Part shown: piece by piece, positions 20,619 through 62,421 of the stretch
Layout of the letters: the number at the start of each line of letters is the position of its first letter
How positions within the stretch are numbered: position 1 is the stretch's first letter
Virus record (IMG/VR): IMGVR_UViG_3300046787_000286
Span: 1 to 64,000 of that record
DNA: 64,000 nucleotides
Reading direction: 5' to 3' (one strand)
Position numbers and translations under genes: made by a program
The notes under the pieces: model-generated
Database searches by the model: none
What the model saw: the letters and a program-made list of their open reading frames with translations, nothing else
Told to the model about the DNA's origin: nothing

Positions 20619-20958
20619 AACTACACAAAACTTACTGGATGTATTTGCCAACTTAGCGCCCTGGCAACCGCCTGTTGTATTTTGGAGATTGCATTACGGT
20701 GAAGTAGGAGAGCCATTGTTTTACACCCAGGAAGATAAACCAGGTAATTACATTGATGTAACGCCTGAGCAATACCAACGTGCTAGCATGCAAGTTAAGG
20801 TAGTTAACAGGAAGTTAGTAGAGCTGTCAACTAAACGTACACGCAAGTTGATGCCTAGTACAACAGGAACTCCTTGCTATCTCTCTGATGTTAGCATTGT
20901 TGTTCCAACAACTGAACAGCACCAGTGCTGGAGATTAAAAACAAATGAAACAAATTGA
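20611..20958 (+). CDS. Hypothetical protein
   Basis: 115 aa; overlaps both neighbours as in an operon. Confidence 0.65.
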   Translation: MNETTQNLLDVFANLAPWQPPVVFWRLHYGEVGEPLFYTQEDKPGNYIDVTPEQYQRASMQVKVVNRKLVELSTKRTRKLMPSTTGTPCYLSDVSIVVPTTEQHQCWRLKTNETN

Positions 20959-21871
20959 CATCGCAGACTTAGACTGCATTTACCTATCGTATGATGAACC
21001 ACAAAAAGAAGAGCATTGGGTCAAGATTAAGAACATGGTGCCTTGGGCACGAAGGGTCGATGGCGTTAAGGGCAGCGATGCTGCTCACAAAGCAGCGGCA
21101 CAGGCCAGTAACACTGATAGATTCATTCTCATTGATGGCGACAATCTCCCCGACCCGTCGTTTTTTAATCAAACGCTTGTTCTTCCTACAGAAGAATACG
21201 AGAACGCTGTTTTCCGCTGGCGGGCACGTAACAATATCAATGGACTAATGTATGGCAATGGTGGTTTATCTTCGTGGACCAAGGAGTTTGTCCATAATAT
21301 GCAGACTCATGAAGCTTCCGACGGACGCACCGAAACCCAGGTCGAGTTCTGTTTCGATCCCCTTTATTGGGCTATGCACGATTGTTATTCTACCACCTAT
21401 CCCAATGGGAGTGCGTTCCATGCCTGGCGTGCAGGATTTCGCGAGGGTGTTAAAATGTGTCTTAACCGGGGTGCAAAGCCATCTGTTGCGGAGTTCCAAA
21501 GCCGTGTTCACAGCAAGAACTTGGATAACTTAACTATCTGGCACAACGTGGGTGCAGATGTAGAATACGGTGAGTGGGCAATTGCAGGGTCACGTATGGG
21601 CACTTATATGACTATGTTAACAGCATGGGATTATACTGCGGTACAGAACTTTGACGAGTTAGAGAAGTTATGGGACACTGTTAAAGATGATAATCCAAGA
21701 CATGTTGCGCTTAGAATCGCTACAGAGTTAAACGCACAACTAGACTTACCAATGATTATTTTAGAATCTGAACAAAGTGCTTTCTTTAAGAAACACTACC
21801 TTTCTAACTGGCACAACCGTGGCATAATGGTTAGAGAGATTGATGTTATTAGACAACAAGAAGGCTGGTAA
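20945..21871 (+). CDS. Glycosyltransferase-like (GT-A) protein
   Basis: 'DCIYLSYDEP', 'RVDGVKGSDAAHKAAA', 'FILIDGDN' DxD motif, 'AWRAGFREGVK'. Confidence 0.6.
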   Translation: MKQIDIADLDCIYLSYDEPQKEEHWVKIKNMVPWARRVDGVKGSDAAHKAAAQASNTDRFILIDGDNLPDPSFFNQTLVLPTEEYENAVFRWRARNNINGLMYGNGGLSSWTKEFVHNMQTHEASDGRTETQVEFCFDPLYWAMHDCYSTTYPNGSAFHAWRAGFREGVKMCLNRGAKPSVAEFQSRVHSKNLDNLTIWHNVGADVEYGEWAIAGSRMGTYMTMLTAWDYTAVQNFDELEKLWDTVKDDNPRHVALRIATELNAQLDLPMIILESEQSAFFKKHYLSNWHNRGIMVREIDVIRQQEGW

Positions 21872-21877: not shown

Positions 21878-23269
21878 ATGACCAAAAGCGTTTTTCAAAG
21901 CTCAGCAGATGAAATGCAAAGCAAGTTAGGTCCTGCAATGTGCCTTGCTAAATGGCAACAAACCAGTTTACACTTAACTACAGGGCACACCAATTCATGC
22001 TATCATCCTCCGTTGCACAAAATTGAACTGAGTGACATAGAAAATAATCCGTCTGGATTGCATAACACTGAGCATAAAAAACAGCAACGTGTGATAATGC
22101 TAAAGAACGAACGCCCTTCAGAATGTTCCTACTGCTGGAACATGGAAGACCTGGGCAAAACAAGCGATAGGCACTACAGATCAGGCGAACCTTGGGCAGC
22201 AGAACACTATGACACAATCAAAAACTCAACTGGACTCGAACGGGACGTTACACCTTCATACGTGGAGGTTAACTTTAATAATGCTTGCAATCTACGTTGC
22301 TCTTATTGCTCTCCTCAGTATAGTTCTAGCTGGGCCGATGAGTCCAATAGGCACGGCGCATATCCTACTAGCGTACCTCATAACGCACCTGAATATTTTA
22401 GTGGCAGTAGGAGACCTATCCCGTCTAGGGAAGCTAATCCATACGTTGATGCGTTTTGGGAGTGGTGGCCGGAGCTTTACCCTAATCTAAAACATTTTAG
22501 AATGACTGGCGGCGAGCCACTAATGGATAAGAATACACACCGTGTATTAGATTACGTTATAGCTAACCCCAGCCCGCAACTGCACTTGAACGTAACTTCA
22601 AACTTTTCAGTAGAAGAAGTACTGTGGCAAAAGTATCTAGACAAAGTCAAGCGCATTTGCGACGGCCGCATCGAACACTTTATGCAGTATGTGAGTTTAG
22701 ATGGCTTTGGATCGCAAGCAGAATACATTAGACACGGGCTTGACTTTAGATTACTGTGGGACAGAGTAAATCAATTCTTAACAGAAGTTCCTGAGTATTC
22801 TAGTTTGACATTTATTGTAACAATGAATAATCTAAGCGTGAATTCATTCAGCAGCTTGATGTCGGGCATATTTGGGTTGCGTCAGATATATTCTAAAACG
22901 TATCAACGTGTGTGGTTCGACACCCCTGTGCTTCGCGATCCTGCGTGGCAAAGTTTACAAATACTACCTGAAAGCTATGCTGACCGTTTGGAAACAACCT
23001 GGGCATGGATGGTAAATCCCTGTAAAGATGTGTCTGAGCCTAATCCGCTGCATGTGTTCAAGGACTATGAGCTTGCTAGATTAGATCGTGACATAGCGTG
23101 GATGCGTGAAGGGCAGAAAATGGACCCTGTGGAATTAAACAAGCGCAAAGCAGACTTCTATCGTTTCTTTTCGGAGCACGATCGACGTCGCGGCACAGAC
23201 TTCAATTTAATATTCCCTGAAATGAAATCATTCTGGCAGGAATGTGAGTACCATGCCAAAAACTCCTAA
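21878..23269 (+). CDS. Radical SAM protein 1 (N-terminal twitch/SPASM-like)
   Basis: CNLRCSYC (CxxxCxxC), 'MTGGEP', N-terminal CLAKW..CYH and CSYCW. Confidence 0.9.
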   Translation: MTKSVFQSSADEMQSKLGPAMCLAKWQQTSLHLTTGHTNSCYHPPLHKIELSDIENNPSGLHNTEHKKQQRVIMLKNERPSECSYCWNMEDLGKTSDRHYRSGEPWAAEHYDTIKNSTGLERDVTPSYVEVNFNNACNLRCSYCSPQYSSSWADESNRHGAYPTSVPHNAPEYFSGSRRPIPSREANPYVDAFWEWWPELYPNLKHFRMTGGEPLMDKNTHRVLDYVIANPSPQLHLNVTSNFSVEEVLWQKYLDKVKRICDGRIEHFMQYVSLDGFGSQAEYIRHGLDFRLLWDRVNQFLTEVPEYSSLTFIVTMNNLSVNSFSSLMSGIFGLRQIYSKTYQRVWFDTPVLRDPAWQSLQILPESYADRLETTWAWMVNPCKDVSEPNPLHVFKDYELARLDRDIAWMREGQKMDPVELNKRKADFYRFFSEHDRRRGTDFNLIFPEMKSFWQECEYHAKNS

Positions 23270-24329
23270 GCTAGTGTTAGACACATTCTCAGAAGTATAC
23301 AATCTACTAAAGCCTTATGCTGATGACGAATTCTGGGATTTGTCACAGCACGATATTATCCCGGGCGCCACGTATGTTGTAGGGCGCAAGCAATGTATAG
23401 ATCATCGCGAGCGTTTACTAGAGTTAGCAAATAACAACACTATACAGCTAGTTATAAGCAACCCGCACGAAGGTTCGCAAACACTAGCAGGGCAAATGAC
23501 ACGTCTGGGGTTCAAGAACGCCAACATCAAGCTAATAGGCGGGGGCAACATGCCTGCAGACTGGGACTACATACTCTACGATAAGTTCCTGCCCGAAATA
23601 CTGGACTACGAAGAAAACTTGATAGCAGCAGACTCTACTCTTGCAATATACAACAAAACATCTAAGCCATACCAGTTTCTTTTTCTAAATGGCAGAGCTC
23701 GCCCACATAGGGCAGACTTAATTCGCAAGCTCGCTACCAGATCATTGCTAAACAACAGCTTGTGGACCAATCTAGACTCAGGAAATGGTGCTGTGCAAAC
23801 ACTGCACCCAGCTTACGAAGTTCCTCGCTATAGAAACAATGCCACAACTGATCACTATGTCAAGTTCGAATTGTTTAATAATGAATGGGGAGAAATCTAT
23901 TTAGAACCTGCGCCTTATATTGATACCTATTTTAGTTTGATAACAGAAACAGTATTTGATATTCCTTATAGTTTCCGCACAGAAAAGATTTGGAAACCCA
24001 TTGTTATGGGTCATCCTTGGATAGCAGTGGCCAACGCAGGCTTTTATAGAGACATGCGCAACCTAGGCTTCCAAACATACTCGCATCTAATAGACGAATC
24101 CTTTGACAGTATTGAAAATAATACAGACAGATTGGATAGAATAGTCGATATAGTAAAAGATTTATGCAGTCAAGACCTTGCGGCTTTCTTGCAAGAGTGC
24201 TATAATACTAGTAAATACAATCAGCAACATCACAGGGAAATGGCCGCAAAGGTCCGAAAAGAATTTCCCGAACGCTTTTTCCAATTTATCAATGAACGAT
24301 CTAGAATACCGCCAGCAAGTACTGGATAA
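23253..24329 (+). CDS. GT10-like (GT-B) glycosyltransferase-like protein
   Basis: 'YFSLITET...RTEKIWKPIVMGHPW...LGFQTY...DESFD' resembles the alpha-1,3-fucosyltransferase C-terminal motif; start probably ATG 23253. Confidence 0.6.
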   Translation: MPKTPKLVLDTFSEVYNLLKPYADDEFWDLSQHDIIPGATYVVGRKQCIDHRERLLELANNNTIQLVISNPHEGSQTLAGQMTRLGFKNANIKLIGGGNMPADWDYILYDKFLPEILDYEENLIAADSTLAIYNKTSKPYQFLFLNGRARPHRADLIRKLATRSLLNNSLWTNLDSGNGAVQTLHPAYEVPRYRNNATTDHYVKFELFNNEWGEIYLEPAPYIDTYFSLITETVFDIPYSFRTEKIWKPIVMGHPWIAVANAGFYRDMRNLGFQTYSHLIDESFDSIENNTDRLDRIVDIVKDLCSQDLAAFLQECYNTSKYNQQHHREMAAKVRKEFPERFFQFINERSRIPPASTG

Positions 24330-25620
24330 ACTTTCACCTAGCTTTTGTGCTGCCAAATGGTACAATGCTACTATATGGCTGGGCTCAGGGCAAACAACCA
24401 GTTGCCATCACCCTCCTGCACATGCCATAGATGCAGAAGCAGTTAAAACAAACCCTGCTGCATTGCACAATACCAAACAAAAGAAAATTGATCGTTTAAT
24501 GATGCAAAATGGGGAAAGACCCTCAGGTTGCGAATACTGTTGGAAAATTGAAGACATGGGAGTAGATGCAGTTAGCGATCGTGTGTACAAATCCAAGATA
24601 TATCCCATAAAGGCTTTAAATGACGCATACTCGACACCTGCTGCACATGACGTGGATCTCCGTACTTTGGAGATTGCTTTTGATCGTACTTGTCAGTTTG
24701 CTTGTAGCTATTGCAACCCAGCATTTAGTTCTACATGGGTTAATGATATTAAACGTAACGGACCCTACACTAACTTGGTTAGCGATGGTAGGAATCACTT
24801 CACTCATACTCATGAGTCTAGTCAGCTATATCGCTACGGGGAAACCAATCCGTATGTTGAGGCATTTTTTGACTGGTGGGAATCGAGCTTACATAGAACA
24901 CTTCAAGAGCTACGAATCACAGGAGGAGAGCCCCTCATGTCCGCCCACACATGGAAGCTCATTGATTGGTTCAAAACAAATTCGGGCAAGAGTAATACAC
25001 GCTTGGCTATCAATAGTAACCTCGGGACTGAGGTCGACGTCACACGTTTACTGGAATCCACGCAGGGTCTAGACGTAGAAATATACACTAGCATGGAAGC
25101 TGTAGGTGCGCAAGCTGAATACATTCGCGACGGACTTGTATATGCAGACTGGCAAGCAAACGTAGATAAGCTGTTAAACGCAGGTGTTACAGTACACTTT
25201 ATGGCAACCATTAATGCTCTTTGTTTGGAAACTCTAACAGATCATTTAAATTACTTGCTGACCTTGAAAGAATTATACGGGCGTGATCGTGTTAATTTTA
25301 CATTAAATATTCTACGCTTTCCGTCATTTCAAAGTGCTCTAGTACTGGATCCAGATGATCGCACCTATTTTAAATTGGCGTTGCAGTCATGGCTAAACGC
25401 CAACGGCAACAGCCCTTTATTGCACGAACACGAAGTTAATCACACACAACGATTAATTGATTACTTGGACATTGTTAAAACACCGCACTCGGATACGTTT
25501 GACATGCCCAAGTTACTGAATGACTTTAAACATTTCTACGAGCAATACGACCTGCGTAGGAAAAAGAATTTAAAAGAAACATTCCCTATTATTGGATATT
25601 GGTATAATTTATGTCTATAA
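24292..25620 (+). CDS. Radical SAM protein 2
   Basis: CQFACSYC, 'ITGGEP', N-terminal CAAKW..CHH and CEYCW; start probably ATG 24292. Confidence 0.9.
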   Translation: MNDLEYRQQVLDKLSPSFCAAKWYNATIWLGSGQTTSCHHPPAHAIDAEAVKTNPAALHNTKQKKIDRLMMQNGERPSGCEYCWKIEDMGVDAVSDRVYKSKIYPIKALNDAYSTPAAHDVDLRTLEIAFDRTCQFACSYCNPAFSSTWVNDIKRNGPYTNLVSDGRNHFTHTHESSQLYRYGETNPYVEAFFDWWESSLHRTLQELRITGGEPLMSAHTWKLIDWFKTNSGKSNTRLAINSNLGTEVDVTRLLESTQGLDVEIYTSMEAVGAQAEYIRDGLVYADWQANVDKLLNAGVTVHFMATINALCLETLTDHLNYLLTLKELYGRDRVNFTLNILRFPSFQSALVLDPDDRTYFKLALQSWLNANGNSPLLHEHEVNHTQRLIDYLDIVKTPHSDTFDMPKLLNDFKHFYEQYDLRRKKNLKETFPIIGYWYNLCL

Positions 25621-27314
25621 CCCAGACTTTAACAACATTGCGTGAACAATACAATGTGCTAGCAGTGGTCGATTTAGACCAAACTGCTAGCATGAGTTAT
25701 TCAGACATGCAAGATTGGCTGCGTAATCAGTGTCAATCCTTGTATGCGCCAGAGTTCAACCCAGGCGACAAAATTATTTTTACTTACTCAACAGACACGT
25801 ATGTAAATGATGATAAGATTGGGTTATTGATTCGCAATTTACAAATATCCATACTTGCAGTTGATATTAGTACTGCATTTATCACAGTGGTTAGCACAAA
25901 CCCAACGTTGCTAGCAGAACTAAAGCTAGTGCAAGCAATGAGTGAACTAGATATAGCAATTGACGGTGTAGTAGTTGATGCGCCTTGGAACAAAAAAATT
26001 GTCAACAAGTACCCTAGCTCTATTAGGGAGTTGTACGATTATGATTCTGTTAACCCATTAAAGATGTCAATTAATGATTTAAGTGATCGCGAGAGGTCAT
26101 TGCTTACCAAAAGTAAAGTATTTTGCATATACCCTTGGACACATTTAAATGCAGGTCCAGACGGACAGGCGTACCCGTGCTGCATGACTGATTTTAAATG
26201 TTCTGTGGGGGACACTAAAAAAGATACTCTGGCTACTATATGGAACAATGACCCAATGAAGCAGGTGCGCTTAGACATGCTAAACGAAACGCCCATTGAA
26301 GGATGTAGCCGCTGTTACGAACAAGAAAAGTCGGGCTTTGTTTCTGGCAGAATCAGTGCAAACAAGCACCACGGACATCATATTAGCAAGGTACTAGAAA
26401 CCAACCCCGACGGTAGCCTGGACCAATTTAAAATGGTGTACTGGGATATTCGATTTAGTAACTTGTGTAATTTACGGTGCCGTAGCTGTGGGCACATTTA
26501 CAGTAGTCAATGGTATCAAGATCAGGCCAAGCTAGCAGGGCCCGCCTGGGCAATTAACAATCAAGTGTTGAATTATGCAGGGCGCACCGAAACAGATATG
26601 TGGGAACAATTAGAACCCCATTTAGAGTACGTGGAGCAGATTTATTTCGCGGGCGGTGAGCCATTACTAATGGAAGAACACTATAACATTCTTGAAGAAT
26701 TACTCAAGCGTGGCCGCACAGATGTTCGATTGATATACAATACAAACTTTACGCACACTAAGTTAAAGGACAAGTATGTGTTTGAATACTGGAAAAAGTT
26801 TGATAGTGTTAGCGTAGGTGCAAGTTTAGACGCAATGGGCCCACGTGGCGAGTATATTAGAAAAGGCACAAACTGGGCGCAAGTTGAACGCAACAGAGAA
26901 AAGATGCTTGAAATTTGCCCGGGTGTTGATTTTTATATTAGTGCAACCCTGAGCATTCTAAATGCCAAACACCTGCCGGACTTTCATAAAAACTGGGTGG
27001 AGCGTGGACTTATTAAAACTCAGGACTTTAACGTAAACATTCTATTAGATCCTTCGTACTATCGAATTGACATTGCATCAGAACAGTACAAAGAAGAAAT
27101 AGCTGCACTGTATCGCGAACACTTGTTCTGGATTGAACAACACGGTGATCATCTTGGCCGTGCTACTACAGGATTTGAATCAGCTATTAAGTTAATGAAT
27201 GCAACGGACAACAGCACGTTAATTCCCAAGTTCTGGGAAAAGACTGAGCAGTTGGATGCTTTAAGAAATGAAACATGCTTGGATATCATACCTGAATTAA
27301 AGGCGCTAAAATGA
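25611..27314 (+). CDS. Radical SAM protein 3 with ~170-aa extra N-terminal domain
   Basis: CNLRCRSC, 'FAGGEP', FCIYPW..YPCC and CSRCY. Confidence 0.9.
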   Translation: MSITQTLTTLREQYNVLAVVDLDQTASMSYSDMQDWLRNQCQSLYAPEFNPGDKIIFTYSTDTYVNDDKIGLLIRNLQISILAVDISTAFITVVSTNPTLLAELKLVQAMSELDIAIDGVVVDAPWNKKIVNKYPSSIRELYDYDSVNPLKMSINDLSDRERSLLTKSKVFCIYPWTHLNAGPDGQAYPCCMTDFKCSVGDTKKDTLATIWNNDPMKQVRLDMLNETPIEGCSRCYEQEKSGFVSGRISANKHHGHHISKVLETNPDGSLDQFKMVYWDIRFSNLCNLRCRSCGHIYSSQWYQDQAKLAGPAWAINNQVLNYAGRTETDMWEQLEPHLEYVEQIYFAGGEPLLMEEHYNILEELLKRGRTDVRLIYNTNFTHTKLKDKYVFEYWKKFDSVSVGASLDAMGPRGEYIRKGTNWAQVERNREKMLEICPGVDFYISATLSILNAKHLPDFHKNWVERGLIKTQDFNVNILLDPSYYRIDIASEQYKEEIAALYREHLFWIEQHGDHLGRATTGFESAIKLMNATDNSTLIPKFWEKTEQLDALRNETCLDIIPELKALK

Positions 27315-28696
27315 GCGCCTGGGCAGAGTTTTACAACAGTATTCGCGATCCTTCATGGCCGGATTGTAACAGTGAAACTGACTTTAAAACCTTGCCGCAG
27401 CACATACAGCAAGAGTGTTGTGAAGTATTTGGCTATGAGCCTGGCCACTTTGCAACCCACAGTAAGTTGCCCAATCGAGTATTTCCTATAAAGACTGAAA
27501 CTGCTTGCCAATTAAAATGGAATTGGAGTACTGTGTTCTTAACGTCTGAAGAAACTGCCAGTTGTCACAGAACAAATCATCACAAGTTTGACACAGGCTT
27601 GTTTGATTTTCACAATACTCCTTCCAAGCTGGATGATCGTGAACAAATGCTGCAAGGTAAATGGCCCCAGGCAGGCTGTGACTACTGTAAGAATATAGAA
27701 GACGCAGGCGGCGCCAGTGATCGTATTACCAATTTAGATTTCCCGGGCATGCATGCACCTGTTGAATTAGATCAAGACCCTACTGCTGTTAATGTAACGC
27801 CCAGGATACTAGAAGTGTATTTTGACAATACCTGCAACTTAAAATGCTTGTATTGCGGCCCGCACTTTAGTAGTTTGTGGGACGCTGAAAACGTACGAGC
27901 AGGTATCCCAGCATTCAATAAAAGTGCAAACATTGAACAAAATAAACAAAAGCTGTTTGACTGGCTAAAGTTAAACCGACAGCATCTCGGTGTGTTTAAT
28001 ATACTAGGCGGTGAACCATTGTATCAGCGCGAGTTGGAGCAGTGTTTAGACTTGTTTGAACAATACCCTGCGCCGGACCTAAAGCTACAAATCTTTACCA
28101 ATCTAAATGCCAAATTGTTACATGTACAAAAGATAGTAGAACGTGTAAACTCGCTAATAGATAGCGGGTGTATTAGGGAGTTTGAAGTTACTGCTAGTCT
28201 TGACTGTTGGGGAGAGCAGCAGGAGTATGTGAGATACCCATTAGACTTAGCAGTTTGGGAACGTAATTTTGAATACCTGCTGAGTCAACGCTGGATCAAT
28301 TTAATTGTTAGCTCAACAGTTACTCCTTTAACTATTAAAACTCTACCTGAGCTGCTGTTAAAAATTCAAACATGGAACAAGACTAGGCCTGTGTATCATT
28401 ATCAGAACTCTGTAAACAGCCCTAGCTATTTGTTCATTGATATATTTGGGGATATATTTAGAAATGATTTTGATCGTGCTGTTGCACTAAAACCCGCAAC
28501 TACCCCCGAAGAAGTTGCTAGTAAGAATTATCTACAAGGCATTGCAGCACAGTCTGCACACGCAGGTGCAAACATAAAAGAAATCAGCAAGTTGTTTAAT
28601 TTTTTAAATACTATAGACCAAAGAAGAAATACCAATTGGTCAACCACATTCCCCTGGCTTGTTAATGAGTTTAACAAATACGGATTAATTAAATGA
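27311..28696 (+). CDS. Radical SAM protein 4
   Basis: CNLKCLYC, 'LGGEP', CQLKW..CHR and CDYCK; N-terminal 'RDPSWPDC' module. Confidence 0.9.
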   Translation: MSAWAEFYNSIRDPSWPDCNSETDFKTLPQHIQQECCEVFGYEPGHFATHSKLPNRVFPIKTETACQLKWNWSTVFLTSEETASCHRTNHHKFDTGLFDFHNTPSKLDDREQMLQGKWPQAGCDYCKNIEDAGGASDRITNLDFPGMHAPVELDQDPTAVNVTPRILEVYFDNTCNLKCLYCGPHFSSLWDAENVRAGIPAFNKSANIEQNKQKLFDWLKLNRQHLGVFNILGGEPLYQRELEQCLDLFEQYPAPDLKLQIFTNLNAKLLHVQKIVERVNSLIDSGCIREFEVTASLDCWGEQQEYVRYPLDLAVWERNFEYLLSQRWINLIVSSTVTPLTIKTLPELLLKIQTWNKTRPVYHYQNSVNSPSYLFIDIFGDIFRNDFDRAVALKPATTPEEVASKNYLQGIAAQSAHAGANIKEISKLFNFLNTIDQRRNTNWSTTFPWLVNEFNKYGLIK

Positions 28697-29901
28697 ATAT
28701 TCCACACGATAAATTTTGCGTACTACCTTGGATCAGCTTAGAAGCATCACCCATTGGTACTGTGCGCCCATGCTGTTTGGCAAAATATGAACTGTACGAC
28801 AATGATGGCAGCAAGTTTAATCTAGCCACAGCTAAGTTTACTGGCATACAGAACTCTACAGAAATGCGCTCGTTGCGCGAACAGTTCCTAGAAGGCACAA
28901 AGCCTGCCACATGCGAAAAGTGCTGGGCCGAAGAAGATGCCGGACGTACATCAAAGCGTATGCACACACTAGATAGACTAAAGCACATGGGCATTACAGG
29001 GGACTGGACTACAGATGCCAAGCCTTTAATGTTCTTGGACCTAAAGCTGGGCAACATCTGTAACCTAAAGTGCCGTATATGCGGGTCATGGTCAAGCTCA
29101 CAGTTTGCGTCAGAAGAACTAAAGTTTGTGTCTGACAAAAAGAATTCATTCCATTATCAAATGCTTCGAGACGGTGCATGGCCCAGGGAAAACGAATCAT
29201 TTTGGACAGAAATAGATAATGCATTAACAGATATTCGTTACATTGAATTCACTGGTGGGGAGCCATTTCTAATACAAGAACACTTTGATATGCTGCAAGG
29301 CATTGTGGATCGTGGTATTGCGCACAATGTAGAAATACATTACAATACAAATGGCACTCAATACCCTGAGCAAGCCGAGCAGATCTGGAAGCACTTTAAA
29401 ACCGTGGAAATTGCATTTTCAATTGATGATCTAGACACACGCTTTGAATACCAACGCTCTAACGCTGTGTGGGCAGAAGTATGTGCTAACCTAGATCGAT
29501 TCCGCGACTTAAAAGAAACACATGCCAATATCAAGCTACAGATATGCACCACTGTAAATGTGTTTAATGTGTACTATATAGATCAAGTTGCAGATTGGAT
29601 TGCTAACAATAGAGAATCCTTTGATTTTGTATACTGGAATATGTTACACGAAATTTGGTACTTCTCTATCAGTCGATTGCCCCACACAGTAAAAACAGTG
29701 CTAGAAACACATTTAAACTCCTGTGCTATTCCCACTGAGTTTGTGGGAGAGTTTAAAAAGATTATTGATTTTATGAACAACGGCGAATCATCAGATGGCT
29801 CTGCTATGTTAGCAGCAATGAAACAATTGGATCAACGTAGAAATCAGAACTTATCACACGTAATGCCAGAGCTGGCAGGATTAATTGGTTATGACATTTA
29901 A
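28693..29901 (+). CDS. Radical SAM protein 5
   Basis: CNLKCRIC, 'FTGGEP', FCVLPW..RPCC and CEKCW. Confidence 0.9.
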   Translation: MNIPHDKFCVLPWISLEASPIGTVRPCCLAKYELYDNDGSKFNLATAKFTGIQNSTEMRSLREQFLEGTKPATCEKCWAEEDAGRTSKRMHTLDRLKHMGITGDWTTDAKPLMFLDLKLGNICNLKCRICGSWSSSQFASEELKFVSDKKNSFHYQMLRDGAWPRENESFWTEIDNALTDIRYIEFTGGEPFLIQEHFDMLQGIVDRGIAHNVEIHYNTNGTQYPEQAEQIWKHFKTVEIAFSIDDLDTRFEYQRSNAVWAEVCANLDRFRDLKETHANIKLQICTTVNVFNVYYIDQVADWIANNRESFDFVYWNMLHEIWYFSISRLPHTVKTVLETHLNSCAIPTEFVGEFKKIIDFMNNGESSDGSAMLAAMKQLDQRRNQNLSHVMPELAGLIGYDI

Positions 29902-30997
29902 ATGTAAACTACCCTGGCAGGCTCTGCACATTGTAACAGGTATGATCGCTCCTTGTTGCAATTTTTCAAGGGTAGGTCCACCGCCAGCTAGTCTTGACGA
30001 ATATATCAACAGCGCAGAACTAAAGTCTATTAGACAGCAACTGTCGCAAGGGGTAGCTCCTCGGGAGTGCAAGAACTGTGTTCACGAAGAAAAGATTTCT
30101 GGACACAGTCATAGAACTCTTTCAAATCGATTTGAAAATAATGATCCTGTGTATGAATTTGAAAATGTGTCTATTGTTACTAGCAATACATGCAATCTAA
30201 AATGCACTAGCTGCACGGGTAATAGCAGTTTTGTTCGTGGCTTAGAATTAACAAAAATGGGTCTAGCCGCCAAGTCACCAGGACATTTTACTCATACATT
30301 AGATATTGATGCGCTAATAAATTACCCCATTAAATCATTAACAATATCTGGTGGCGAGCCATTTGTTGATAGTACTAGAGAAGTGCTGGACAAACTTGTG
30401 CATGCGGGCCGCAGCACTGTGATTGATCTAAGACTAAATTCAAACTGCACAATGATAACACGTGACTGGTTAGAGTATCTTAACAGTAACTTTAAATCAA
30501 CCATGATCAAGGCCAGCTTGGATGGAGTAGGCGCAGTTAATGATTATTTGCGTTACCCCAGTAACTGGGATGAAATTGCAGCAAACTTAGCAATGCTCAA
30601 AGAATACCCACGCATTACTGCTGTGTTAGTAACCAGCGTATTGAGTAATCTAAGCGTGATTAGATTTCATGATCTTATCAATTGGTGTGTTGATAACAAC
30701 ATTGAAGATCTAGTGGTATTAACACTTCGTAACCCTGTACACATGCAACCACATGTGCTACCTGCAGAGCTAAAGCAACAACTGTTATTGACATATACTG
30801 AATTGAGAGAAAAACACAAACACGCTGGAGATCGCATTGTGGAATGTATTGATACATGTATAGGGATTTGTAGCAATCAAACCTCCACTGCTGATGAATT
30901 CACTCGCGCACTAGAATGGTATCAAGCACATGATCGCCATCGCGGCAATAACATATTTGATGTATTCCCAGAATTAAAACCATATGAACAAACCTGA
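29891..30997 (+). CDS. Radical SAM protein 6
   Basis: CNLKCTSC, 'SGGEP', CKLPW..APCC and CKNCV. Confidence 0.9.
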   Translation: MTFKCKLPWQALHIVTGMIAPCCNFSRVGPPPASLDEYINSAELKSIRQQLSQGVAPRECKNCVHEEKISGHSHRTLSNRFENNDPVYEFENVSIVTSNTCNLKCTSCTGNSSFVRGLELTKMGLAAKSPGHFTHTLDIDALINYPIKSLTISGGEPFVDSTREVLDKLVHAGRSTVIDLRLNSNCTMITRDWLEYLNSNFKSTMIKASLDGVGAVNDYLRYPSNWDEIAANLAMLKEYPRITAVLVTSVLSNLSVIRFHDLINWCVDNNIEDLVVLTLRNPVHMQPHVLPAELKQQLLLTYTELREKHKHAGDRIVECIDTCIGICSNQTSTADEFTRALEWYQAHDRHRGNNIFDVFPELKPYEQT

Positions 30998-32279
30998 CAC
31001 AATGTGTTTAGCGCCGTGGGTGCATACATATCTAAGCCCGCAAACAGAGCGTAGAATGTGCTGTGCGAGTCGCGAACCTGCACAGAACTTTACCCAGTAT
31101 ATAGACACTGGCGCCGGTACCGGGAAATACATTCCTTTAACACTGGAGCAGCACTGGAATAGTGACCACATGAAGAGTGTGCGTAAAAGAATGATGAACG
31201 GGGAAACTCTCCCAGAATGTGAAGTATGCAATGACCGACTCCTTAACACTTCAGTATACCGCACCTACTTCGATCATTTATTTCAGCACAAACTCCCCGA
31301 AGTTTACGCTACAACGCTGGAGGATGGTTTCACGACTATGGCTCCTGTATCGTGGGATTATAGGTTCAGTAACTTATGTAACTTCAAGTGCAGGACCTGC
31401 GGAGATATGCTATCATCAGCCTGGGAATCAGAGCAGAAGACTCATAGCATGGTTAATTGGCACGACAGCAAAAACAATTGGATGGTACCCGAAATTCGCA
31501 AAGAGATATCACAATTTCAGGATGGTGAGATTGAGGCCGAATTTAGTGCGGCTGTAGAAAATCATTCAGTAGAAGAAATATACTGGGTAGGTGGAGAACC
31601 GCTGATGTACGAACAGCATTGGCGCTATATGAAAAGAATTGTGGAGCTGGGTGATGGACCTAAACTATACGCTAGATACAATACTAATTTGTCTAGAATT
31701 AGCTATCGGGGTATATCTCTTTATAGGGATATCCTCGCTCATGTACGGGATTGGCAGATATGTGCTAGCTTGGATGGAACTAACGAAATCGGTGAATATA
31801 TTCGTACAGGACTGGATTACAAACAGTTCTTTGATAATTTTGAATACGGATTACAACATGCAAAGCACCGCAGACAAATGCGTATTGACTTTACCCTCAC
31901 ACTACCCGGGATGTTCGAGACTGGTGCGATACAACGCCTGGCTCAGTACTGGGGCGTGGAACTACTAAGCAAGGTAATCTTTAGCTTTAGTCCAGATATC
32001 ATAATGAGTCCGCTGGCTCTGCCCCGGCACATACTGCATCCTTGGCTAGATGAATTGATTGCAGAATGTACTCAAGACAGCATGCGTGATGTATTAACAC
32101 AGCTAAAGAACCGCCCTACGTTTGATGAACAATGGCCAAATGAGTACCAAGCAGCTCTTGCTCGAGGCCGGGCTCGTGTGTTAAAATTAGAACAAATACG
32201 CACACAAAAAGTAACCATGACTGACATATTGAGTCAGCGTAAAGATGTATTAGAATGGTGGATGAACATTGAAACTTGA
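30984..32279 (+). CDS. Radical SAM protein 7
   Basis: CNFKCRTC, 'VGGEP', CLAPW..RMCC and CEVCN. Confidence 0.9.
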   Translation: MNKPDTMCLAPWVHTYLSPQTERRMCCASREPAQNFTQYIDTGAGTGKYIPLTLEQHWNSDHMKSVRKRMMNGETLPECEVCNDRLLNTSVYRTYFDHLFQHKLPEVYATTLEDGFTTMAPVSWDYRFSNLCNFKCRTCGDMLSSAWESEQKTHSMVNWHDSKNNWMVPEIRKEISQFQDGEIEAEFSAAVENHSVEEIYWVGGEPLMYEQHWRYMKRIVELGDGPKLYARYNTNLSRISYRGISLYRDILAHVRDWQICASLDGTNEIGEYIRTGLDYKQFFDNFEYGLQHAKHRRQMRIDFTLTLPGMFETGAIQRLAQYWGVELLSKVIFSFSPDIIMSPLALPRHILHPWLDELIAECTQDSMRDVLTQLKNRPTFDEQWPNEYQAALARGRARVLKLEQIRTQKVTMTDILSQRKDVLEWWMNIET

Positions 32280-33309
32280 TGAAATTGAAATCACCCTGCG
32301 TGGCAAAGACAGTGAGTTAACTGTTTACATAGACATAGATAACAACAGTCTAAGCCGTAAATGGCTGGGTGCATTAAATCATTTAATTGCAAATGATTAT
32401 CATTTAGAAAAGAATTACTGCTGGCTAGGGTGGACAGGGACAGAAAGATCAGTTGATTTATTGTGTCAAAACATTAACCGTAGTGTTGAGCATATTAACC
32501 GCAGCGCATTAGACTATTACATAGCTACAGATCCATTTACCTCTGCTAATGTAGTAGATGAAAAGCTAGGTGTAAACCACGAGCGCATGAATCTGCTGCA
32601 TCGTTGGTTTGAAGACCTGCAAGGATGGTCTGGCAGTATCTCAAACCACTATAACAGTGCAGACACAGAAACACGCTGGCATATACGTCAATTAAATCTC
32701 CTGTGCCACGAGCTAGAAAGCCTTGTGTTAAGCATACGCAAAGACTCAACAGCACCAGAATGGAAGCGCCCTAGTCAATTAATGTGTTGGCTAAATGCTC
32801 CACGTTATGAATTAGAGGAAGAAGATTATGAGCTCTTTGGGGTTGATACTATTAATCGTAGTCTCGGTGGTGTGTATGTGGGAGTTAATAAAGCAGTGGG
32901 CAAACATCATTGGGAAGTGTTCTGTGACGAAGGCAGAGATAGTAGAATTGGTGAGCTGGTTACTAGTTCCTTACGTTCGCAAACTCAAGCCGCTGGGGAC
33001 TTTGATATTGAATGGGCCCGTGACCCTGGAGCGTTTCACTGGCAGATCAAACAACTGGGTGAGTTTAAAGAGTGGCTTACAAATAACGGGTTCGACCCAG
33101 ACGATAAGCACCTTACAATCGGGCACCCGCAAGTGGGACAAGTGGATCTCAACAGGTCGTTTGGGTCAACTGACTATCGAGAGATATGGCGCCAGCTATC
33201 CACTAAGCTGGATGTGTATAAAATACGCACATCATCTGCTGAAGCTATATATGATTACAGATGGTCGGATATCGATTATGCTAAACAACAACAAAGGTAT
33301 TTAAAATGA
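32269..33309 (+). CDS. Hypothetical protein in the radical SAM island
   Basis: 346-aa ORF overlapping both neighbours; no motif recognised. Confidence 0.75.
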   Translation: MKLDEIEITLRGKDSELTVYIDIDNNSLSRKWLGALNHLIANDYHLEKNYCWLGWTGTERSVDLLCQNINRSVEHINRSALDYYIATDPFTSANVVDEKLGVNHERMNLLHRWFEDLQGWSGSISNHYNSADTETRWHIRQLNLLCHELESLVLSIRKDSTAPEWKRPSQLMCWLNAPRYELEEEDYELFGVDTINRSLGGVYVGVNKAVGKHHWEVFCDEGRDSRIGELVTSSLRSQTQAAGDFDIEWARDPGAFHWQIKQLGEFKEWLTNNGFDPDDKHLTIGHPQVGQVDLNRSFGSTDYREIWRQLSTKLDVYKIRTSSAEAIYDYRWSDIDYAKQQQRYLK

Positions 33310-33407
33310 AATGGATTAAAAATCTATGGGCAAGGATCACGTTAGAAATACGTTATCGTAAAAAACTAAAAGAACTACGTAAACGCGACCCATTTATCTA
33401 CAAATGA
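33306..33407 (+). CDS. 33-aa basic peptide (missed by ORF track)
   Basis: MKWIKNLWARITLEIRYRKKLKELRKRDPFIYK*; ATGA overlaps at both ends. Confidence 0.7.
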   Translation: MKWIKNLWARITLEIRYRKKLKELRKRDPFIYK

Positions 33408-34885
33408 ATACACTAGGCATATCAGCAGGGTTTCATGATGCAGCAGCGTCTGTAATTGACCGCGACGGTAACATACTGTTTGCCAGTCATTCTGAACGTT
33501 ATAGTAAACAAAAGAGTGACTCAGATATTTCGTTAGAAATGTTAAACGAAATAGATATGAGTACTGTAGATACCATTGCGTACTACGAGCGTCCTTTAGT
33601 TAAACAACTACGTCAATTTTATTCCGGACAAGGGATTGAGTGGGATAAGCTAACTACTCGACAAGTATTAGAACAACAGTTGGGCTACAACAGAATTGGC
33701 AATCGCAAGCTAAAAAGCTACAATCATCACTTGTGTCATGCAGCCGCAGGCTTTCAAACCAGCTCGTTTGATCGTGCTACTGTAGTTGTGATTGATGCAG
33801 TAGGCGAGTTTGAAACCATTACTATATGGGGAGCAGAATATGATAAACACGGTCGTGCAAAGTATAAGAAACTTTGGCAACAACATTACCCACATTCAAT
33901 TGGACTCTTTTACACTGGAGTTACTCAGCGGGTTGGCCTACGCCCACTAGACGAAGAATACATTCTAATGGGAATGGCAGCATACGGCAGTAACGACGTT
34001 AGTAATCGCATGCGTTATGATCTAATAGACGACGAATGGGAAATACGTTTCAAGGAGAACTTGCATCTAGGACTGTCAGTTAAATATCTAAGCGATTATT
34101 CAGACTTTGATATTGCTGCCGGCGCACAAGACTTGGTAGAAGACCTGATACTCAACGTTATGGTTCGAGCAAGAAAGTTCAAGTGGAGCAGTAATTTAGT
34201 CTACATGGGCGGTGTTGCTCTTAATTGCTCTGCTAATAGGAGAATTGGAAATTATTTCGATAATATATGGATTATGCCTAATCCTGGCGATGCTGGCAGT
34301 AGTCTTGGCGCTGCCGCTTTGGCTCATGGGCGTAAAATTAACTGGAGCAACGCTTATCTCGGGCATGATATTCCTGGTGCTTATCCTGTTAACGACATAC
34401 TTGATGAGCTACTTGTTCGGAAGATTGTGGGAGTGGCTTCCGGGAGAGCCGAGTTCGGTCCAAGAGCACTTGGAAACAGAAGCCTGCTTGCAGATCCTAG
34501 AGGCAGCGAGATTAAGGAGAAAGTAAATGACATTAAACGTAGACAACAATTCAGACCATTTGCGCCCGTTATTTTGGAGGAACTGGCTGATACTTACTTT
34601 GATATGCCTCGTGGCTTCAGTAATAGTAGGTATATGCAGTCAGTCGCTCGTTGTAGGGTACCTGAGTTATTTCCTGCTATCGTTCACGCTGACGGCACTA
34701 GTCGTGTTCAGACAGTGCCGAAAGATGGATCAGGCATTAGAGAACTGCTTGAAAAATGGTACGTAATGACTGACTGCCCCATGTTGCTTAACACAAGTTT
34801 AAACATACGTGGGGAGCCTATGGTTAACGATCGAGCAGACGCTGACCGCTTTGAACGAGAGTATGGGGTTAGAGTATGTTCTTAA
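33404..34885 (+). CDS. Carbamoyltransferase (NodU/CmcH family)
   Basis: 'GISAGFHDAAA', 'HHLCHAAA', 'GGVALNC', 'GRAEFGPRALGNRS', 'RQQFRPFAP', 'LLNTSLNIRGEP'. Confidence 0.95.
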   Translation: MNTLGISAGFHDAAASVIDRDGNILFASHSERYSKQKSDSDISLEMLNEIDMSTVDTIAYYERPLVKQLRQFYSGQGIEWDKLTTRQVLEQQLGYNRIGNRKLKSYNHHLCHAAAGFQTSSFDRATVVVIDAVGEFETITIWGAEYDKHGRAKYKKLWQQHYPHSIGLFYTGVTQRVGLRPLDEEYILMGMAAYGSNDVSNRMRYDLIDDEWEIRFKENLHLGLSVKYLSDYSDFDIAAGAQDLVEDLILNVMVRARKFKWSSNLVYMGGVALNCSANRRIGNYFDNIWIMPNPGDAGSSLGAAALAHGRKINWSNAYLGHDIPGAYPVNDILDELLVRKIVGVASGRAEFGPRALGNRSLLADPRGSEIKEKVNDIKRRQQFRPFAPVILEELADTYFDMPRGFSNSRYMQSVARCRVPELFPAIVHADGTSRVQTVPKDGSGIRELLEKWYVMTDCPMLLNTSLNIRGEPMVNDRADADRFEREYGVRVCS

Positions 34886-48445: not shown

Positions 48446-48603
48446 TATTTGATCCCACAAGCCGTTTTGATTTTGTCTGCTTCGACGCCGGCTTTGATAG
48501 CCTCGATGCGACATTGATTGTTACCGTATTCGATGATCACCAAGGGTGAAAACATTATTACGATAAACCCCATGAACATACCAACGATCCACTTATCACT
48601 CAT
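48445..48603 (-). CDS. 52-aa membrane peptide (missed by ORF track)
   Basis: MSDKWIVGMFMGFIVIMFSPLVIIEYGNNQCRIEAIKAGVEADKIKTACGIK*; TAATG coupling to the SPFH gene. Confidence 0.65.
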   Translation of the reverse strand: MSDKWIVGMFMGFIVIMFSPLVIIEYGNNQCRIEAIKAGVEADKIKTACGIK

Positions 48604-59068: not shown

Positions 59069-59152
59069 TGGTGCCCAGGGCGAGACTCGAACTCGCACGG
59101 ATTTCTCCACTACCACCTCAAGATAGCGTGGCTACCATTACACCACCTGGGC
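59069..59152 (-). tRNA. tRNA-Leu(GAG)
   Basis: GCCCAGG/CCTGGGC acceptor, CTATC-TTGAGGT-GGTAG anticodon arm, long variable arm, TTCGAGT, CCA. Confidence 0.93.
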
Positions 59153-59527: not shown

Positions 59528-59541
59528 TGCAGTCTCCTGAT

Positions 59542-59877: not shown

Positions 59878-59883
59878 AATTTT

Positions 59884-60111: not shown

Positions 60112-60131
60112 AAAATATCTAAGTTAGTTGT

Positions 60132-60205: not shown

Positions 60206-60212
60206 TAATTAC

Positions 60213-62376: not shown

Positions 62377-62406
62377 CTACTTTTTTGCATTTTGGGTAAA
62401 GTGTTA

Positions 62407-62414
62407 TATAAATA
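62407..62414 (+). promoter_or_regulatory. T4-type late promoter TATAAATA
   Basis: Exact T4 late consensus, 7 nt before ATG 62422. Confidence 0.7.
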
Positions 62415-62421
62415 TTCCACT

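What the first reader, a model, noticed from the sequence alone, without database searches (positions are those of the whole stretch)
21878..32279. Radical SAM paralogues carry the auxiliary-cluster (twitch/SPASM-like) motif N-terminal to the SAM cluster, and have diverged strongly
Seen: every copy has N-terminal C-x2-3-W...(P)C(C/H) and a later CxxC (CSYC, CEYC, CSRC, CDYC, CEKC, CKNC, CEVC; CQKC in the copy at 62422) before CxxxCxxC, and ends in a helical 'D..R...' segment. Established: SPASM/twitch domains are normally C-terminal to the radical SAM barrel. Inference: a permuted family expanded to at least 8 divergent members, each probably acting on a different sugar or position, or forming a hetero-oligomer.
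Basis: partly seen in the sequence, partly recalled or inferred. Interest (0 to 1): 0.62.

Follow-up and report, generated by a model that had tools for sequence, protein, structure and literature searches.

The report
N-terminal-twitch radical SAM gene array
A freshwater jumbo phage carries ten very divergent copies of a radical SAM enzyme whose second iron-sulfur domain precedes the catalytic barrel; this layout is already a curated family of unknown function, and here the genes are interleaved with sugar-handling genes, which points to glycan tailoring.

Summary
Seven ORFs in 21878-32279 and one at 62392-63600 are full-length members of NCBIfam NF033640 (N_Twi_rSAM, "twitch domain-containing radical SAM protein"; 227-396 bits, cut-off 170). 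Two more lie elsewhere in the 214-kb virus record. All ten keep four N-terminal Cys (C..C, then CxxC) followed by CxxxCxxC. Pairwise identity is only 17-31%. Pfam SPASM matches the N-terminal part. The four Cys align with the four auxiliary-cluster ligands of BtrN.

So the permuted layout is correct but already catalogued; its function is not described in anything I could find.

New here:
- The array (core r1-r2-r3-r5-r7) is syntenic in at least 80 related viral contigs. Near-complete 331-349 kb relatives carry 7-13 copies.
- Arrays of 2-10 copies also occur in Bdellovibrionota and other bacterial chromosomes, so the subfamilies predate this phage clade.
- Neighbouring copies occur naturally fused (r3+r5, r5+r7).
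- The genes are interleaved with GT10-like GT-B glycosyltransferases (fold-verified). A NodU-type carbamoyltransferase, a sugar aminotransferase and an NDP-sugar dehydratase/epimerase lie nearby, downstream of tail-fibre-like genes.

Best reading: position-specific radical tailoring of a phage-made glycan or its nucleotide-sugar precursors. This is inferred from context, not shown.

The parts
21878..23269 (+). r1, N_Twi_rSAM copy (463 aa); core member of the conserved array
   Evidence: NF033640 E 3.1e-95, 319.6 bits. An orthologue is present in 73 of 80 related loci.
23244..24329 (+). GT-B fold glycosyltransferase-like protein (family C), inserted between r1 and r2
   Evidence: AF2 model pLDDT 92.6. 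Foldseek best match is H. pylori alpha1,3-fucosyltransferase 2nzx, E 4e-4, and all other hits are GT-B enzymes. It is a paralogue of 34869-36059 and 36040-37185 (hhalign 99%). Present in 73 of 80 loci.
24178..25620 (+). r2, N_Twi_rSAM copy; the real start is probably the ATG at 24292
   Evidence: NF033640 E 3e-84, match from residue 53. Present in 76 of 80 loci.
25611..27314 (+). r3, N_Twi_rSAM copy with a 165-aa N-terminal extension of unknown function
   Evidence: NF033640 E 2.7e-118 over residues 168-565. Pfam SPASM at 172-236, E 2e-12. Present in 80 of 80 loci.
27311..28696 (+). r4, accessory N_Twi_rSAM copy
   Evidence: NF033640 E 5e-67. A closest-match gene is found in only 9 of 80 loci. 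Groups with r1/r2 in the tree.
28693..29901 (+). r5, N_Twi_rSAM copy (402 aa), the one modelled
   Evidence: NF033640 E 7.6e-102. Pfam SPASM at 9-78. AF2 pLDDT 91.5, pTM 0.89. The radical SAM core matches DesII, BlsE, viperin and anSME at Z about 12.
29885..30997 (+). r6, accessory N_Twi_rSAM copy
   Evidence: NF033640 E 8.6e-70. A closest-match gene is found in 1 of 80 loci.
30984..32279 (+). r7, N_Twi_rSAM copy lacking the C-terminal LDxxR motif
   Evidence: NF033640 E 6.5e-84, profile positions 2-388. Alignment. Present in 73 of 80 loci.
62392..63600 (+). r8, solitary N_Twi_rSAM copy next to a tRNA cluster
   Evidence: NF033640 E 3.9e-73. tRNAs at 59069-62312.
20945..21871 (+). Family B protein with a DGD motif; possible GT-A glycosyltransferase (weak lead)
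   Evidence: Pfam Glyco_tranf_2_3 E 0.005, below cut-off, in 5 of 23 orthologues. Homologous to the C-terminal half of 37184-38989 (hhalign 99%). Present in 62 of 80 loci. Family B-like genes also sit next to N_Twi_rSAM genes in some MAG contigs.
32269..33309 (+). Highly conserved protein of unknown function that closes the rSAM array
   Evidence: Present in 70 of 80 loci. Mean column identity 62%. No Pfam, NCBIfam, PDB or Atlas match.
33404..34885 (+). NodU/CmcH-type O-carbamoyltransferase
   Evidence: Pfam Carbam_trans_N E 3.6e-36 and Carbam_trans_C E 2e-46. PHROG Nol-like carbamoyltransferase E 2.3e-93.
34869..36059 (-). GT-B (GT10-like) family C paralogue
   Evidence: hhalign to 23244-24329 at 99.7%. 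Own-HMM scan.
36040..37185 (-). GT-B (GT10-like) family C paralogue
   Evidence: hhalign 99.4-99.6%. In relatives, extra copies of this type are inserted between r5 and r7.
37184..38989 (+). 601-aa protein whose C-terminal part (372-581) is a family B domain
   Evidence: hhalign to 20945-21871 at 99.2%.
38961..40049 (-). DegT/DnrJ/EryC1-type sugar aminotransferase
   Evidence: Pfam PF01041 E 2.3e-62. NCBIfam PseC- and DesI-type hits are below the equivalog cut-offs.
39994..40962 (-). NDP-sugar 4,6-dehydratase/epimerase-type SDR
   Evidence: Pfam Epimerase E 7.7e-45, GDP_Man_Dehyd E 1.2e-35. dTDP-glucose 4,6-dehydratase profile E 7.5e-39, below cut-off.
16396..17685 (+). Tail-fibre-like protein with an intramolecular chaperone domain, upstream on the same strand
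   Evidence: Pfam Peptidase_G2 IMC domain E 2.9e-7. PHROG tail fibre and virion structural hits.

Best explanation
The genes are ten paralogues (eight in the window) of NCBIfam NF033640. This is a family of radical SAM enzymes in which a one-cluster 'twitch' iron-sulfur domain lies N-terminal to the AdoMet radical barrel instead of C-terminal. The domain has a Cys before a beta-hairpin, a Cys after it, and a CxxC after a helix.

Shown:
- family membership;
- the conserved four-plus-three Cys pattern;
- a confident radical SAM fold;
- conservation of a five-gene core array (r1, r2, r3, r5, r7) across a clade of roughly 340-kb freshwater jumbo phages;
- interleaving with GT-B glycosyltransferase-fold genes.

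Inferred mechanism:
- Each enzyme binds two [4Fe-4S] clusters.
- The CxxxCxxC cluster cleaves SAM to the 5'-deoxyadenosyl radical, which abstracts one particular hydrogen from a carbohydrate substrate.
- The auxiliary cluster, fully ligated by four Cys as in BtrN, takes or gives the electron needed to finish an oxidation, epimerisation, deoxygenation or similar step.
- The divergent paralogues supply different regio- or substrate specificities. They act in series, possibly as a physical assembly, with the neighbouring glycosyltransferases, carbamoyltransferase, aminotransferase and dehydratase.
- Together these would build a heavily tailored glycan, or its nucleotide-sugar units, made late in infection alongside tail-fibre genes.

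The acceptor is unknown. It could be a virion protein such as the tail fibres or the 4775-aa protein upstream, or the host envelope.

The confidence given (0.5) is for the whole statement including the carbohydrate substrate. Family identity alone I put at about 0.97.
For: Family and motif:
- all ten copies are over the curated cut-off.
- the invariant residues are C9, C28, C74, C77, C123, C127 and C130, plus GGE.

Twitch homology:
- Pfam SPASM matches the N-terminal part.
- C-terminal SPASM parts of the ScmE and StsB profiles align to the r3 N-terminal part.
- the BtrN twitch aligns, with the four Cys on C169, C187, C232 and C235.
- PMC6231123: twitch is a truncated SPASM with one cluster. 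BtrN uses four Cys placed before the hairpin, after the hairpin and after helix alpha2'.
- the AF2 model (pLDDT 91.5) has strands at 15-18 and 23-24 between C9 and C28, and helices before C74xxC77.

Core fold. The best matches are DesII, BlsE, viperin and anSME (Z 11.8-12.1), three of which act on nucleotide or nucleotide-sugar substrates.

Conservation:
- 163 viral contigs carry a relative; synteny holds in the 80 loci kept.
- 7-13 copies in five 95-100% complete relatives.

Glycan context:
- family C has a GT-B fold, and the nearest structure is a GT10 fucosyltransferase.
- a second, separate operon links r10 to two more family C genes at C1:193829-196992.
- in relatives, extra family C genes are inserted between rSAM genes.
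- carbamoyltransferase, DegT aminotransferase and 4,6-dehydratase-type SDR.
- single-copy bacterial members lie near GT2 (Paenibacillus) or GT90 (Nereida) genes.

Operon: 4-17 nt overlaps between consecutive genes, all on the + strand after the tail-fibre-like genes.
Against: - No substrate is shown. Most characterised SPASM/twitch enzymes modify peptides, not sugars.
- The structural matches of the core are tied among enzymes of very different function, so they do not discriminate.
- In the long Bdellovibrionota and Parcubacteria arrays I found no glycosyltransferase neighbours. Most neighbours had no Pfam match, and one was an Asp/Asn beta-hydroxylase.
- In Paenibacillus the gene sits between an acyl carrier protein and FabG/KS genes, which points to a lipid-like substrate.
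- The aminotransferase and SDR are on the opposite strand, several kb away, and were within reach in only 15 and 10 of the 80 loci (many loci are too short to include them).
- The GT-A assignment of family B is weak.
- Clustering of the four Cys in 3D and iron-sulfur content were not measured.
Confidence: 0.5

Rival explanations
1. The enzymes modify proteins or peptides, as most SPASM/twitch maturases do (thioether or carbon-carbon cross-links, epimerisation, formylglycine-type oxidation). Likely targets would be virion proteins encoded just upstream: the tail-fibre-like proteins, the 4775-aa protein, or small ORFs such as 20611-20958. The glycosyltransferases would then decorate the same protein targets independently.
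For: - The closest sequence and fold relatives with auxiliary clusters include SkfB, CteB, anSME, SuiB and ChlB, all of which act on peptides or proteins.
- The array is co-oriented with, and directly downstream of, structural genes.
- One Bdellovibrionia array neighbours an Asp/Asn beta-hydroxylase-type gene.
Against: - No RiPP recognition element, leader-peptide-like gene, protease or exporter was found next to the array.
- The genes interleaved with the rSAM genes are glycosyltransferase-fold proteins, in two separate operons.
- BtrN, the best twitch match, is a sugar-type dehydrogenase.
Confidence: 0.2
2. The paralogues form an obligate hetero-oligomeric machine that works on one substrate, rather than a set of independent enzymes. 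Some subunits could serve mainly as scaffolds or electron relays.
For: - Natural didomain proteins fuse neighbouring copies in gene order: r3+r5, r5+r7 and r6-like+r7. At least 62 protein clusters of about 800-870 aa are of this kind.
- The core set of five subfamilies is inherited together.
- Consecutive genes overlap by a few nucleotides.
Against: - Every copy keeps all seven Cys and GGEP, so none looks degenerate.
- Accessory copies (r4, r6) come and go, and solitary copies exist (r8, r9; single copies in Paenibacillus and Nereida).
- Gene fusion also occurs between enzymes that merely act consecutively.
Confidence: 0.15
3. The cluster hypermodifies phage DNA or nucleotides. The radical SAM enzymes would tailor a base-linked sugar or side chain to evade host restriction.
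For: - T4 DNA beta-glucosyltransferase is among the GT-B structural matches of family C (prob 0.87-0.91).
- A thymidylate synthase family gene lies at 41592-42491.
- The viperin and MoaA cores, which act on nucleotides, are among the nearest relatives.
Against: - The ThyA match is a strong full-length thymidylate synthase hit (353.6 bits), not obviously a hydroxymethylase.
- The best GT match is a fucosyltransferase, not a DNA glucosyltransferase.
- The cluster sits in a structural-gene block.
- No DNA-binding or base-excision-type partner was seen.
Confidence: 0.08
4. The family acts on lipid or polyketide-like chains, and the phage cluster builds a glycolipid.
For: In two Paenibacillus genomes the single copy lies between an acyl carrier protein and FabG-type reductase, two ketosynthases and a GT2. 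The tetraether lipid synthase and GDGT-MAS appear among distant matches.
Against: No ACP, ketosynthase or acyltransferase was found in the phage cluster. The Paenibacillus copy belongs to one subfamily only.
Confidence: 0.05

Closest known systems
NCBIfam NF033640, N_Twi_rSAM (twitch domain-containing radical SAM protein)
   Same: All ten copies match the full profile above the curated cut-off. The order of Cys motifs is the same: twitch first, then CxxxCxxC.
   Different: Nothing structural. The family has no assigned function, and I found no paper on it. Added here: the jumbo-phage setting, 7-13 copies per genome, the natural fusions and the glycosyltransferase partners.
BtrN (butirosin 2-deoxy-scyllo-inosamine dehydrogenase), the founding twitch enzyme
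   Same: One auxiliary cluster with four Cys ligands placed before and after a beta-hairpin and in a CxxC. The N-terminal domain profile aligns to BtrN 168-237 with all four Cys matched (PMC6231123). Its substrate is carbohydrate-like.
   Different: In BtrN the twitch follows the barrel; here it precedes it. The sequence similarity is marginal (E 0.27). Activity here is untested.
DesII and BlsE (radical SAM enzymes acting on TDP-4-amino-4,6-dideoxyglucose and cytosylglucuronate)
   Same: These are the best structural matches of the r5 core: Z 12.1, rmsd about 4 A, 211-226 residues. A DesI-type aminotransferase and a 4,6-dehydratase-type SDR, which make the DesII-type substrate class, lie in the window.
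   Different: The Z scores are tied with viperin, anSME and SkfB. Identity is 16-17%. The match covers only the barrel (model residues about 106-369).
Canonical SPASM maturases (anSME, SkfB, CteB, PqqE, SuiB)
   Same: Homologous core and homologous Cys-rich iron-sulfur domain.
   Different: In those enzymes the domain is C-terminal and, in the SPASM enzymes (anSME, CteB, PqqE, SuiB), carries seven Cys for two clusters; SkfB is a one-cluster twitch enzyme. Here it is N-terminal with four Cys. No RRE peptide-binding domain is present.
GT10 alpha1,3-fucosyltransferase (H. pylori FucT, 2nzx), for the interleaved family C genes
   Same: GT-B fold; best Foldseek match E 4e-4, probability 1.0. The Atlas lead is to Glyco_transf_10. 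A 'TEK'-containing C-terminal motif resembles the FucT motif (recalled from memory, not tested).
   Different: No Pfam PF00852 hit. About 13% identity, TM about 0.46. Donor and acceptor are unknown.

Membership tests
NCBIfam NF033640 N_Twi_rSAM | Whole-protein score over the curated cut-off (170 bits) with near full-length profile coverage | tested here: met
   227-396 bits and profile coverage about 1-398 for all eight window copies. Ten copies are over the cut-off in the record.
NCBIfam NF033640 N_Twi_rSAM | Twitch-type Cys motif located N-terminal to the CxxxCxxC motif | tested here: met
   C9, C28 and C74xxC77 come before C123xxxC127xxC130 and are invariant in the ten copies. In the 81-sequence alignment C28 is nearly invariant. 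Pfam SPASM matches the N-terminal part.
Radical SAM superfamily | CxxxCxxC cluster motif, GGE SAM-binding motif and a partial TIM-barrel core | tested here: met
   Motifs are invariant. Pfam PF04055 hits, some below the gathering score. The AF2 model at pLDDT 91.5 matches many solved radical SAM cores at Z 10-12.
Radical SAM superfamily | Reductive cleavage of SAM by a [4Fe-4S] cluster | not testable with these tools
   Needs anaerobic reconstitution and assay.
SPASM subfamily (two auxiliary clusters) | Seven-Cys motif CX9-15GX4C-gap-CX2CX5CX3C-gap-C, C-terminal to the barrel (PMC6231123) | tested here: not met
   Only four conserved Cys. There is no CX5CX3C after the CxxC, and the domain is N-terminal.
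Twitch subfamily (one auxiliary cluster) | Cys before and after a beta-hairpin plus Cys after the following helix, ligating one Fe-S cluster | tested here: inconclusive
   The sequence pattern and predicted secondary structure fit. The four Cys align to the BtrN ligands, but at E 0.27. Spatial clustering of the Cys could not be measured because model coordinates are not returned. Metal content is untested.
Sugar-tailoring radical SAM enzymes (BtrN, DesII, BlsE type) | Activity on a carbohydrate or nucleotide-sugar substrate | not testable with these tools
   Only context and tied fold matches.
GT10 / GT-B glycosyltransferases (family C neighbours) | Two-Rossmann-domain GT-B fold with a match to GT10 enzymes | tested here: inconclusive
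   The fold is met: all significant Foldseek hits are GT-B enzymes, with FucT best. Sequence membership in PF00852 is not met.

The most novel reading that the evidence does not exclude
A widespread clade of roughly 340-kb freshwater jumbo phages carries a conserved assembly line. It has at least five ancient radical SAM subfamilies, sometimes fused into didomain enzymes, plus several GT10-like glycosyltransferases and a carbamoyltransferase. This line would build a radically tailored glycan on the virion's fibres or giant surface protein. That would be a kind of phage-encoded carbohydrate chemistry with no described precedent, and it would give the first functional handle on the large N_Twi_rSAM family, which also forms ten-gene arrays in predatory Bdellovibrionota.
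Probability: 0.3. Interest if true: 0.75.

Novelty: new member of a known kind. Interest (0 to 1): 0.45.

Why it matters
The permuted architecture itself is catalogued, so the finding's headline claim is not a discovery. I found nothing published on its function. This phage clade offers an unusually informative context:
- a fixed set of divergent subfamilies;
- natural fusions that say which copies work together;
- glycosyltransferase partners in two separate operons.

That makes a concrete biochemical hypothesis testable: radical tailoring of nucleotide sugars or glycans with a fully ligated N-terminal auxiliary cluster. It also bears on why jumbo phages and predatory bacteria both keep many copies.

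Tried and rejected
- DNA megablast of the region against cultured phages: no match.
- tblastn shows only distant copies (22-27% identity) in Vibrio schizoT4-like phages, K566/K567 and Ralstonia RsoM2USA. Their neighbours are unannotated and did not match my family B/C profiles.
- The search for related loci with the broad alignments A1 and A2 failed for lack of a conserved stretch. A narrower alignment, A6, worked.
- A terminase search in the record found nothing; the record is about 62% complete. I therefore did not place the phage taxonomically.
- Profile searches of families B and C and of the 32269 protein against PDB sequences: nothing.
- Atlas search of the 32269 protein: no usable hit.
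- Literature searches for the family, for an N-terminal twitch or SPASM domain, for jumbo phage radical SAM genes and for Bdellovibrio radical SAM genes: nothing relevant.
- Complex prediction of the r3 core with r5: no verdict, score 0.00. This counts neither for nor against binding.
- The look-up of sequencing runs: freshwater DNA holders only, no RNA holder.
- Cys-Cys distances in the model could not be obtained because coordinates are not exposed.
- The costly whole-library representative search was not run, because family assignment was already clear.

Full report
**What is there.** The window is the first 64 kb of a 214,006-bp IMG/VR virus record that CheckV rates about 62% complete. It comes from freshwater metagenomes. 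Between 21878 and 32279, all on the + strand, lie seven intact ORFs (r1-r7) plus one unrelated ORF at 23244-24329. An eighth copy (r8) is at 62392-63600. All eight match NCBIfam NF033640, 'N_Twi_rSAM, twitch domain-containing radical SAM protein', across the whole 398-position profile. E-values run from 5e-67 to 2.7e-118 and scores from 227 to 396 bits, against a curated cut-off of 170. A six-frame search of the whole record finds ten copies over the cut-off. The extra two are at C1:167736-169262(-) and C1:193829-195100(-).

**The motif.** In a MAFFT alignment of the ten copies and in an 81-sequence alignment with orthologues, the conserved residues (r5 numbering) are C9, C28, C74 and C77. C9, C74 and C77 are invariant in both alignments; C28 is invariant in the ten copies and nearly invariant in the 81. 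These are followed by C123xxxC127xxC130, GGE at 188-190 (P191 is nearly invariant), and a few Arg, Asn and Ser positions. Pairwise identity among the ten is 17-31%. Two details differ: r8 lacks the Trp after the first Cys, and r7 lacks the C-terminal LDxxR motif.

**Is the N-terminal segment a twitch domain?**
- Pfam's SPASM model (PF13186) matches r3 residues 172-236 over its full length (E 2e-12) and r5 residues 9-78 (E 3.9e-6).
- The C-terminal SPASM parts of the ScmE and StsB NCBIfam profiles align to the r3 N-terminal region.
- A profile built from the N-terminal domain alone (A7) finds, weakly (E 0.27), BtrN residues 168-237. In that alignment the four conserved Cys fall on BtrN C169, C187, C232 and C235 (a similar hit appears).
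- According to PMC6231123, the SPASM motif is CX9-15GX4C-gap-CX2CX5CX3C-gap-C. Twitch is the truncated one-cluster version. Both are C-terminal. BtrN's twitch supplies four Cys (before the hairpin, after the hairpin, and two after helix alpha2') to a fully ligated [4Fe-4S] cluster.
- The AlphaFold2 model of r5 (pLDDT 91.5, pTM 0.89) has strands at 15-18 and 23-24 between C9 and C28, helices at 49-66, and C74xxC77 at the start of the next helix. This is the same order of elements.
- There is no CX5CX3C, so this is a twitch and not a SPASM domain.

I could not measure Cys-Cys distances because model coordinates are not returned. No solved structure belongs to the family.

**The core.** Model residues about 106-369 superpose on many radical SAM barrels. 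DesII and BlsE score Z 12.1, viperin-like enzymes 11.9, and anSME 11.8 (Foldseek). These scores are tied, so they do not identify a substrate.

**Known or new?** The N-terminal-twitch layout is the defining feature of an existing curated family. I found no paper on the family's function.

**Distribution.**
- A scan of viral contigs with r5 found 163 contigs encoding a relative. The 80 loci kept have r5 orthologues at 63-77% identity, each with 3-8 rSAM genes within about 20 kb.
- Synteny is conserved: tail-fibre-like gene, then 17699, 19010, 19842, 20611, 20945, r1, 23244, r2, r3, r5, r7, 32269, carbamoyltransferase, then 34869(-), 36040(-), 37184 and the aminotransferase(-).
- r4 and r6 are accessory, found in 9 and 1 of the 80 loci.
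- Five near-complete relatives (331-349 kb, 95-100% complete, two with terminal repeats) carry 13, 9, 7, 10 and 9 copies over the cut-off.
- The word-indexed protein search returned the capped 8000 proteins at E below 1e-10.
- A scan of prokaryote genomes and my own HMM scan show arrays of 2-10 copies in many Bdellovibrionota genomes, for example L120 with ten. L137 has seven copies next to ATP synthase genes. A Parcubacteria genome has eight.
- Single copies occur in Paenibacillus, Nereida, Cellvibrionaceae and Cytophagales.
- In a FastTree of 85 sequences the phage paralogues are not monophyletic. r1, r2 and r4 form a deep supported clade. r1, r2, r3, r5 and r7 each have their own sister in another array (L091), and bacterial rows interleave. 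The subfamilies are therefore older than this phage clade. The tree has many long branches, so finer placements are unsafe.

**Fusions.** The top 62 hits are 800-870-aa proteins with two complete N_Twi_rSAM modules. Domain and BLAST analysis shows that they are r3+r5, r5+r7 and r6-like+r7, that is, neighbouring genes fused in gene order. This suggests that adjacent copies act together. A complex prediction for r3 plus r5 gave no verdict and is not used as evidence.

**Neighbours.**
- The ORF at 23244-24329 and its paralogues at 34869-36059(-) and 36040-37185(-) are homologous (hhalign 99%). They fold confidently (pLDDT 92.6) as GT-B glycosyltransferases. The nearest structure is H. pylori alpha1,3-fucosyltransferase, and all other matches are GT-B enzymes. 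An Atlas lead points the same way.
- My HMM scan of the whole record finds a second, separate operon in which r10 is followed by two more genes of this family (C1:195075-196034 and 196015-196992, - strand). A sixth copy is at 209888-211177.
- In relatives, extra copies are inserted between rSAM genes.
- 20945-21871 and the C-terminal half of 37184-38989 form another family with a DGD motif. Their hits to GT2-like models are only weak.
- 33404-34885 is a NodU/CmcH-type carbamoyltransferase.
- 38961-40049(-) is a DegT-type sugar aminotransferase, and 39994-40962(-) is a 4,6-dehydratase/epimerase-type SDR.
- Upstream on the same strand are a tail-fibre-like gene with an intramolecular chaperone domain and a 4775-aa ORF with FG-GAP and CBM_5_12 matches.
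- Consecutive genes in the array overlap by 4-17 nt.

**Interpretation.** The identity of the genes is secure. The mechanism I commit to is inferred. Each enzyme would be a two-cluster radical SAM enzyme with a fully Cys-ligated auxiliary cluster acting as an electron relay, as proposed for BtrN and anSME (PMC6231123). Each would abstract hydrogen from a particular position of a carbohydrate. The set would work with the glycosyltransferases and tailoring enzymes to make a complex glycan late in infection. I put this at about 0.45-0.5.

**Rivals:**
- protein or peptide modification of virion proteins, 0.2;
- an obligate hetero-oligomer, 0.15, which does not exclude the main reading;
- DNA or nucleotide hypermodification, 0.08;
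- a lipid-type substrate, as the Paenibacillus ACP/KS context suggests, 0.05.

**Against the sugar reading.** The long bacterial arrays show no glycosyltransferase neighbours, and most characterised relatives act on peptides.

**Verdict.** The architecture is already known. The jumbo-phage array, the fusions and the glycosyltransferase pairing are new context for a family whose function is not described in anything I found. Interest is moderate.

Noticed in passing
window 1239-15566 (+): A single 4775-aa ORF directly upstream of the tail-fibre-like genes. Its only Pfam matches are an FG-GAP repeat (around residue 2712) and a CBM_5_12 carbohydrate-binding module (around residue 3936). It may be a giant fibre or surface protein and a candidate acceptor for the glycan.
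   Followed up: partly
window 59069-62312 (-): A cluster of six tRNA genes: Leu-GAG, Val-GAC, Leu-TAG, Cys-GCA, Asn-GTT, and one odd call with a two-base anticodon. It lies just upstream of the solitary copy r8. A phage tRNA-Cys next to Cys-rich Fe-S enzyme genes may be coincidence.
   Followed up: no
G000:C1:193829-196992 (-), outside the window: A second operon pairs an N_Twi_rSAM copy (r10) with two GT10-like family C genes. A further family C gene lies at C1:209888-211177.
   Followed up: partly
P0001-P0062; L016:13357-15813: Natural proteins of about 800-870 aa with two full N_Twi_rSAM modules: fusions of r3+r5, r5+r7 or r6-like+r7.
   Followed up: yes
L120, L137, L129, L110 and many other Bdellovibrionota and Parcubacteria loci: Bacterial chromosomes with tandem arrays of up to ten N_Twi_rSAM genes, often mixed with other low-scoring radical SAM genes and unannotated ORFs. 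Predatory Bdellovibrionota dominate the hits.
   Followed up: partly
L086, L087 (Haliscomenobacter sp. MAG contigs of 183 and 148 kb); L088 (Legionellales MAG): These 'bacterial' MAG contigs carry the same phage gene cluster in the same order (r3 66-68% identical). They are probably mis-binned phage contigs, or possibly a hint at the host.
   Followed up: no
window 25611-26105 (r3 residues 1-165); G000:C1 r9 N-terminal part: r3 and r9 carry N-terminal extensions of about 120-165 aa before the twitch domain, with no family match. Orthologues of r3 occur with and without the extension.
   Followed up: no
window 32269-33309 (+): This is one of the two most conserved accessory proteins aligned from the cluster (mean column identity 62%, many invariant His, Glu, Asp and Trp). 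It has no match in Pfam, NCBIfam, PHROGs, PDB sequences or the Atlas. It always follows r7.
   Followed up: partly
window 41592-42491 (-), 47597-48514 (-), 48842-50149 (-); G000:C1:65141-66088 (-): Other genes nearby: a thymidylate synthase, an SPFH/Band 7 protein, a DUF2201 metallopeptidase plus VWA protein, and a T4 RNA ligase 1-like gene.
   Followed up: no
L100:9552-14512 and L102 (Paenibacillus): A single N_Twi_rSAM gene sits between an acyl carrier protein and a FabG-type reductase, two ketosynthases and a GT2. This is a quite different, lipid-like context for one subfamily.
   Followed up: partly
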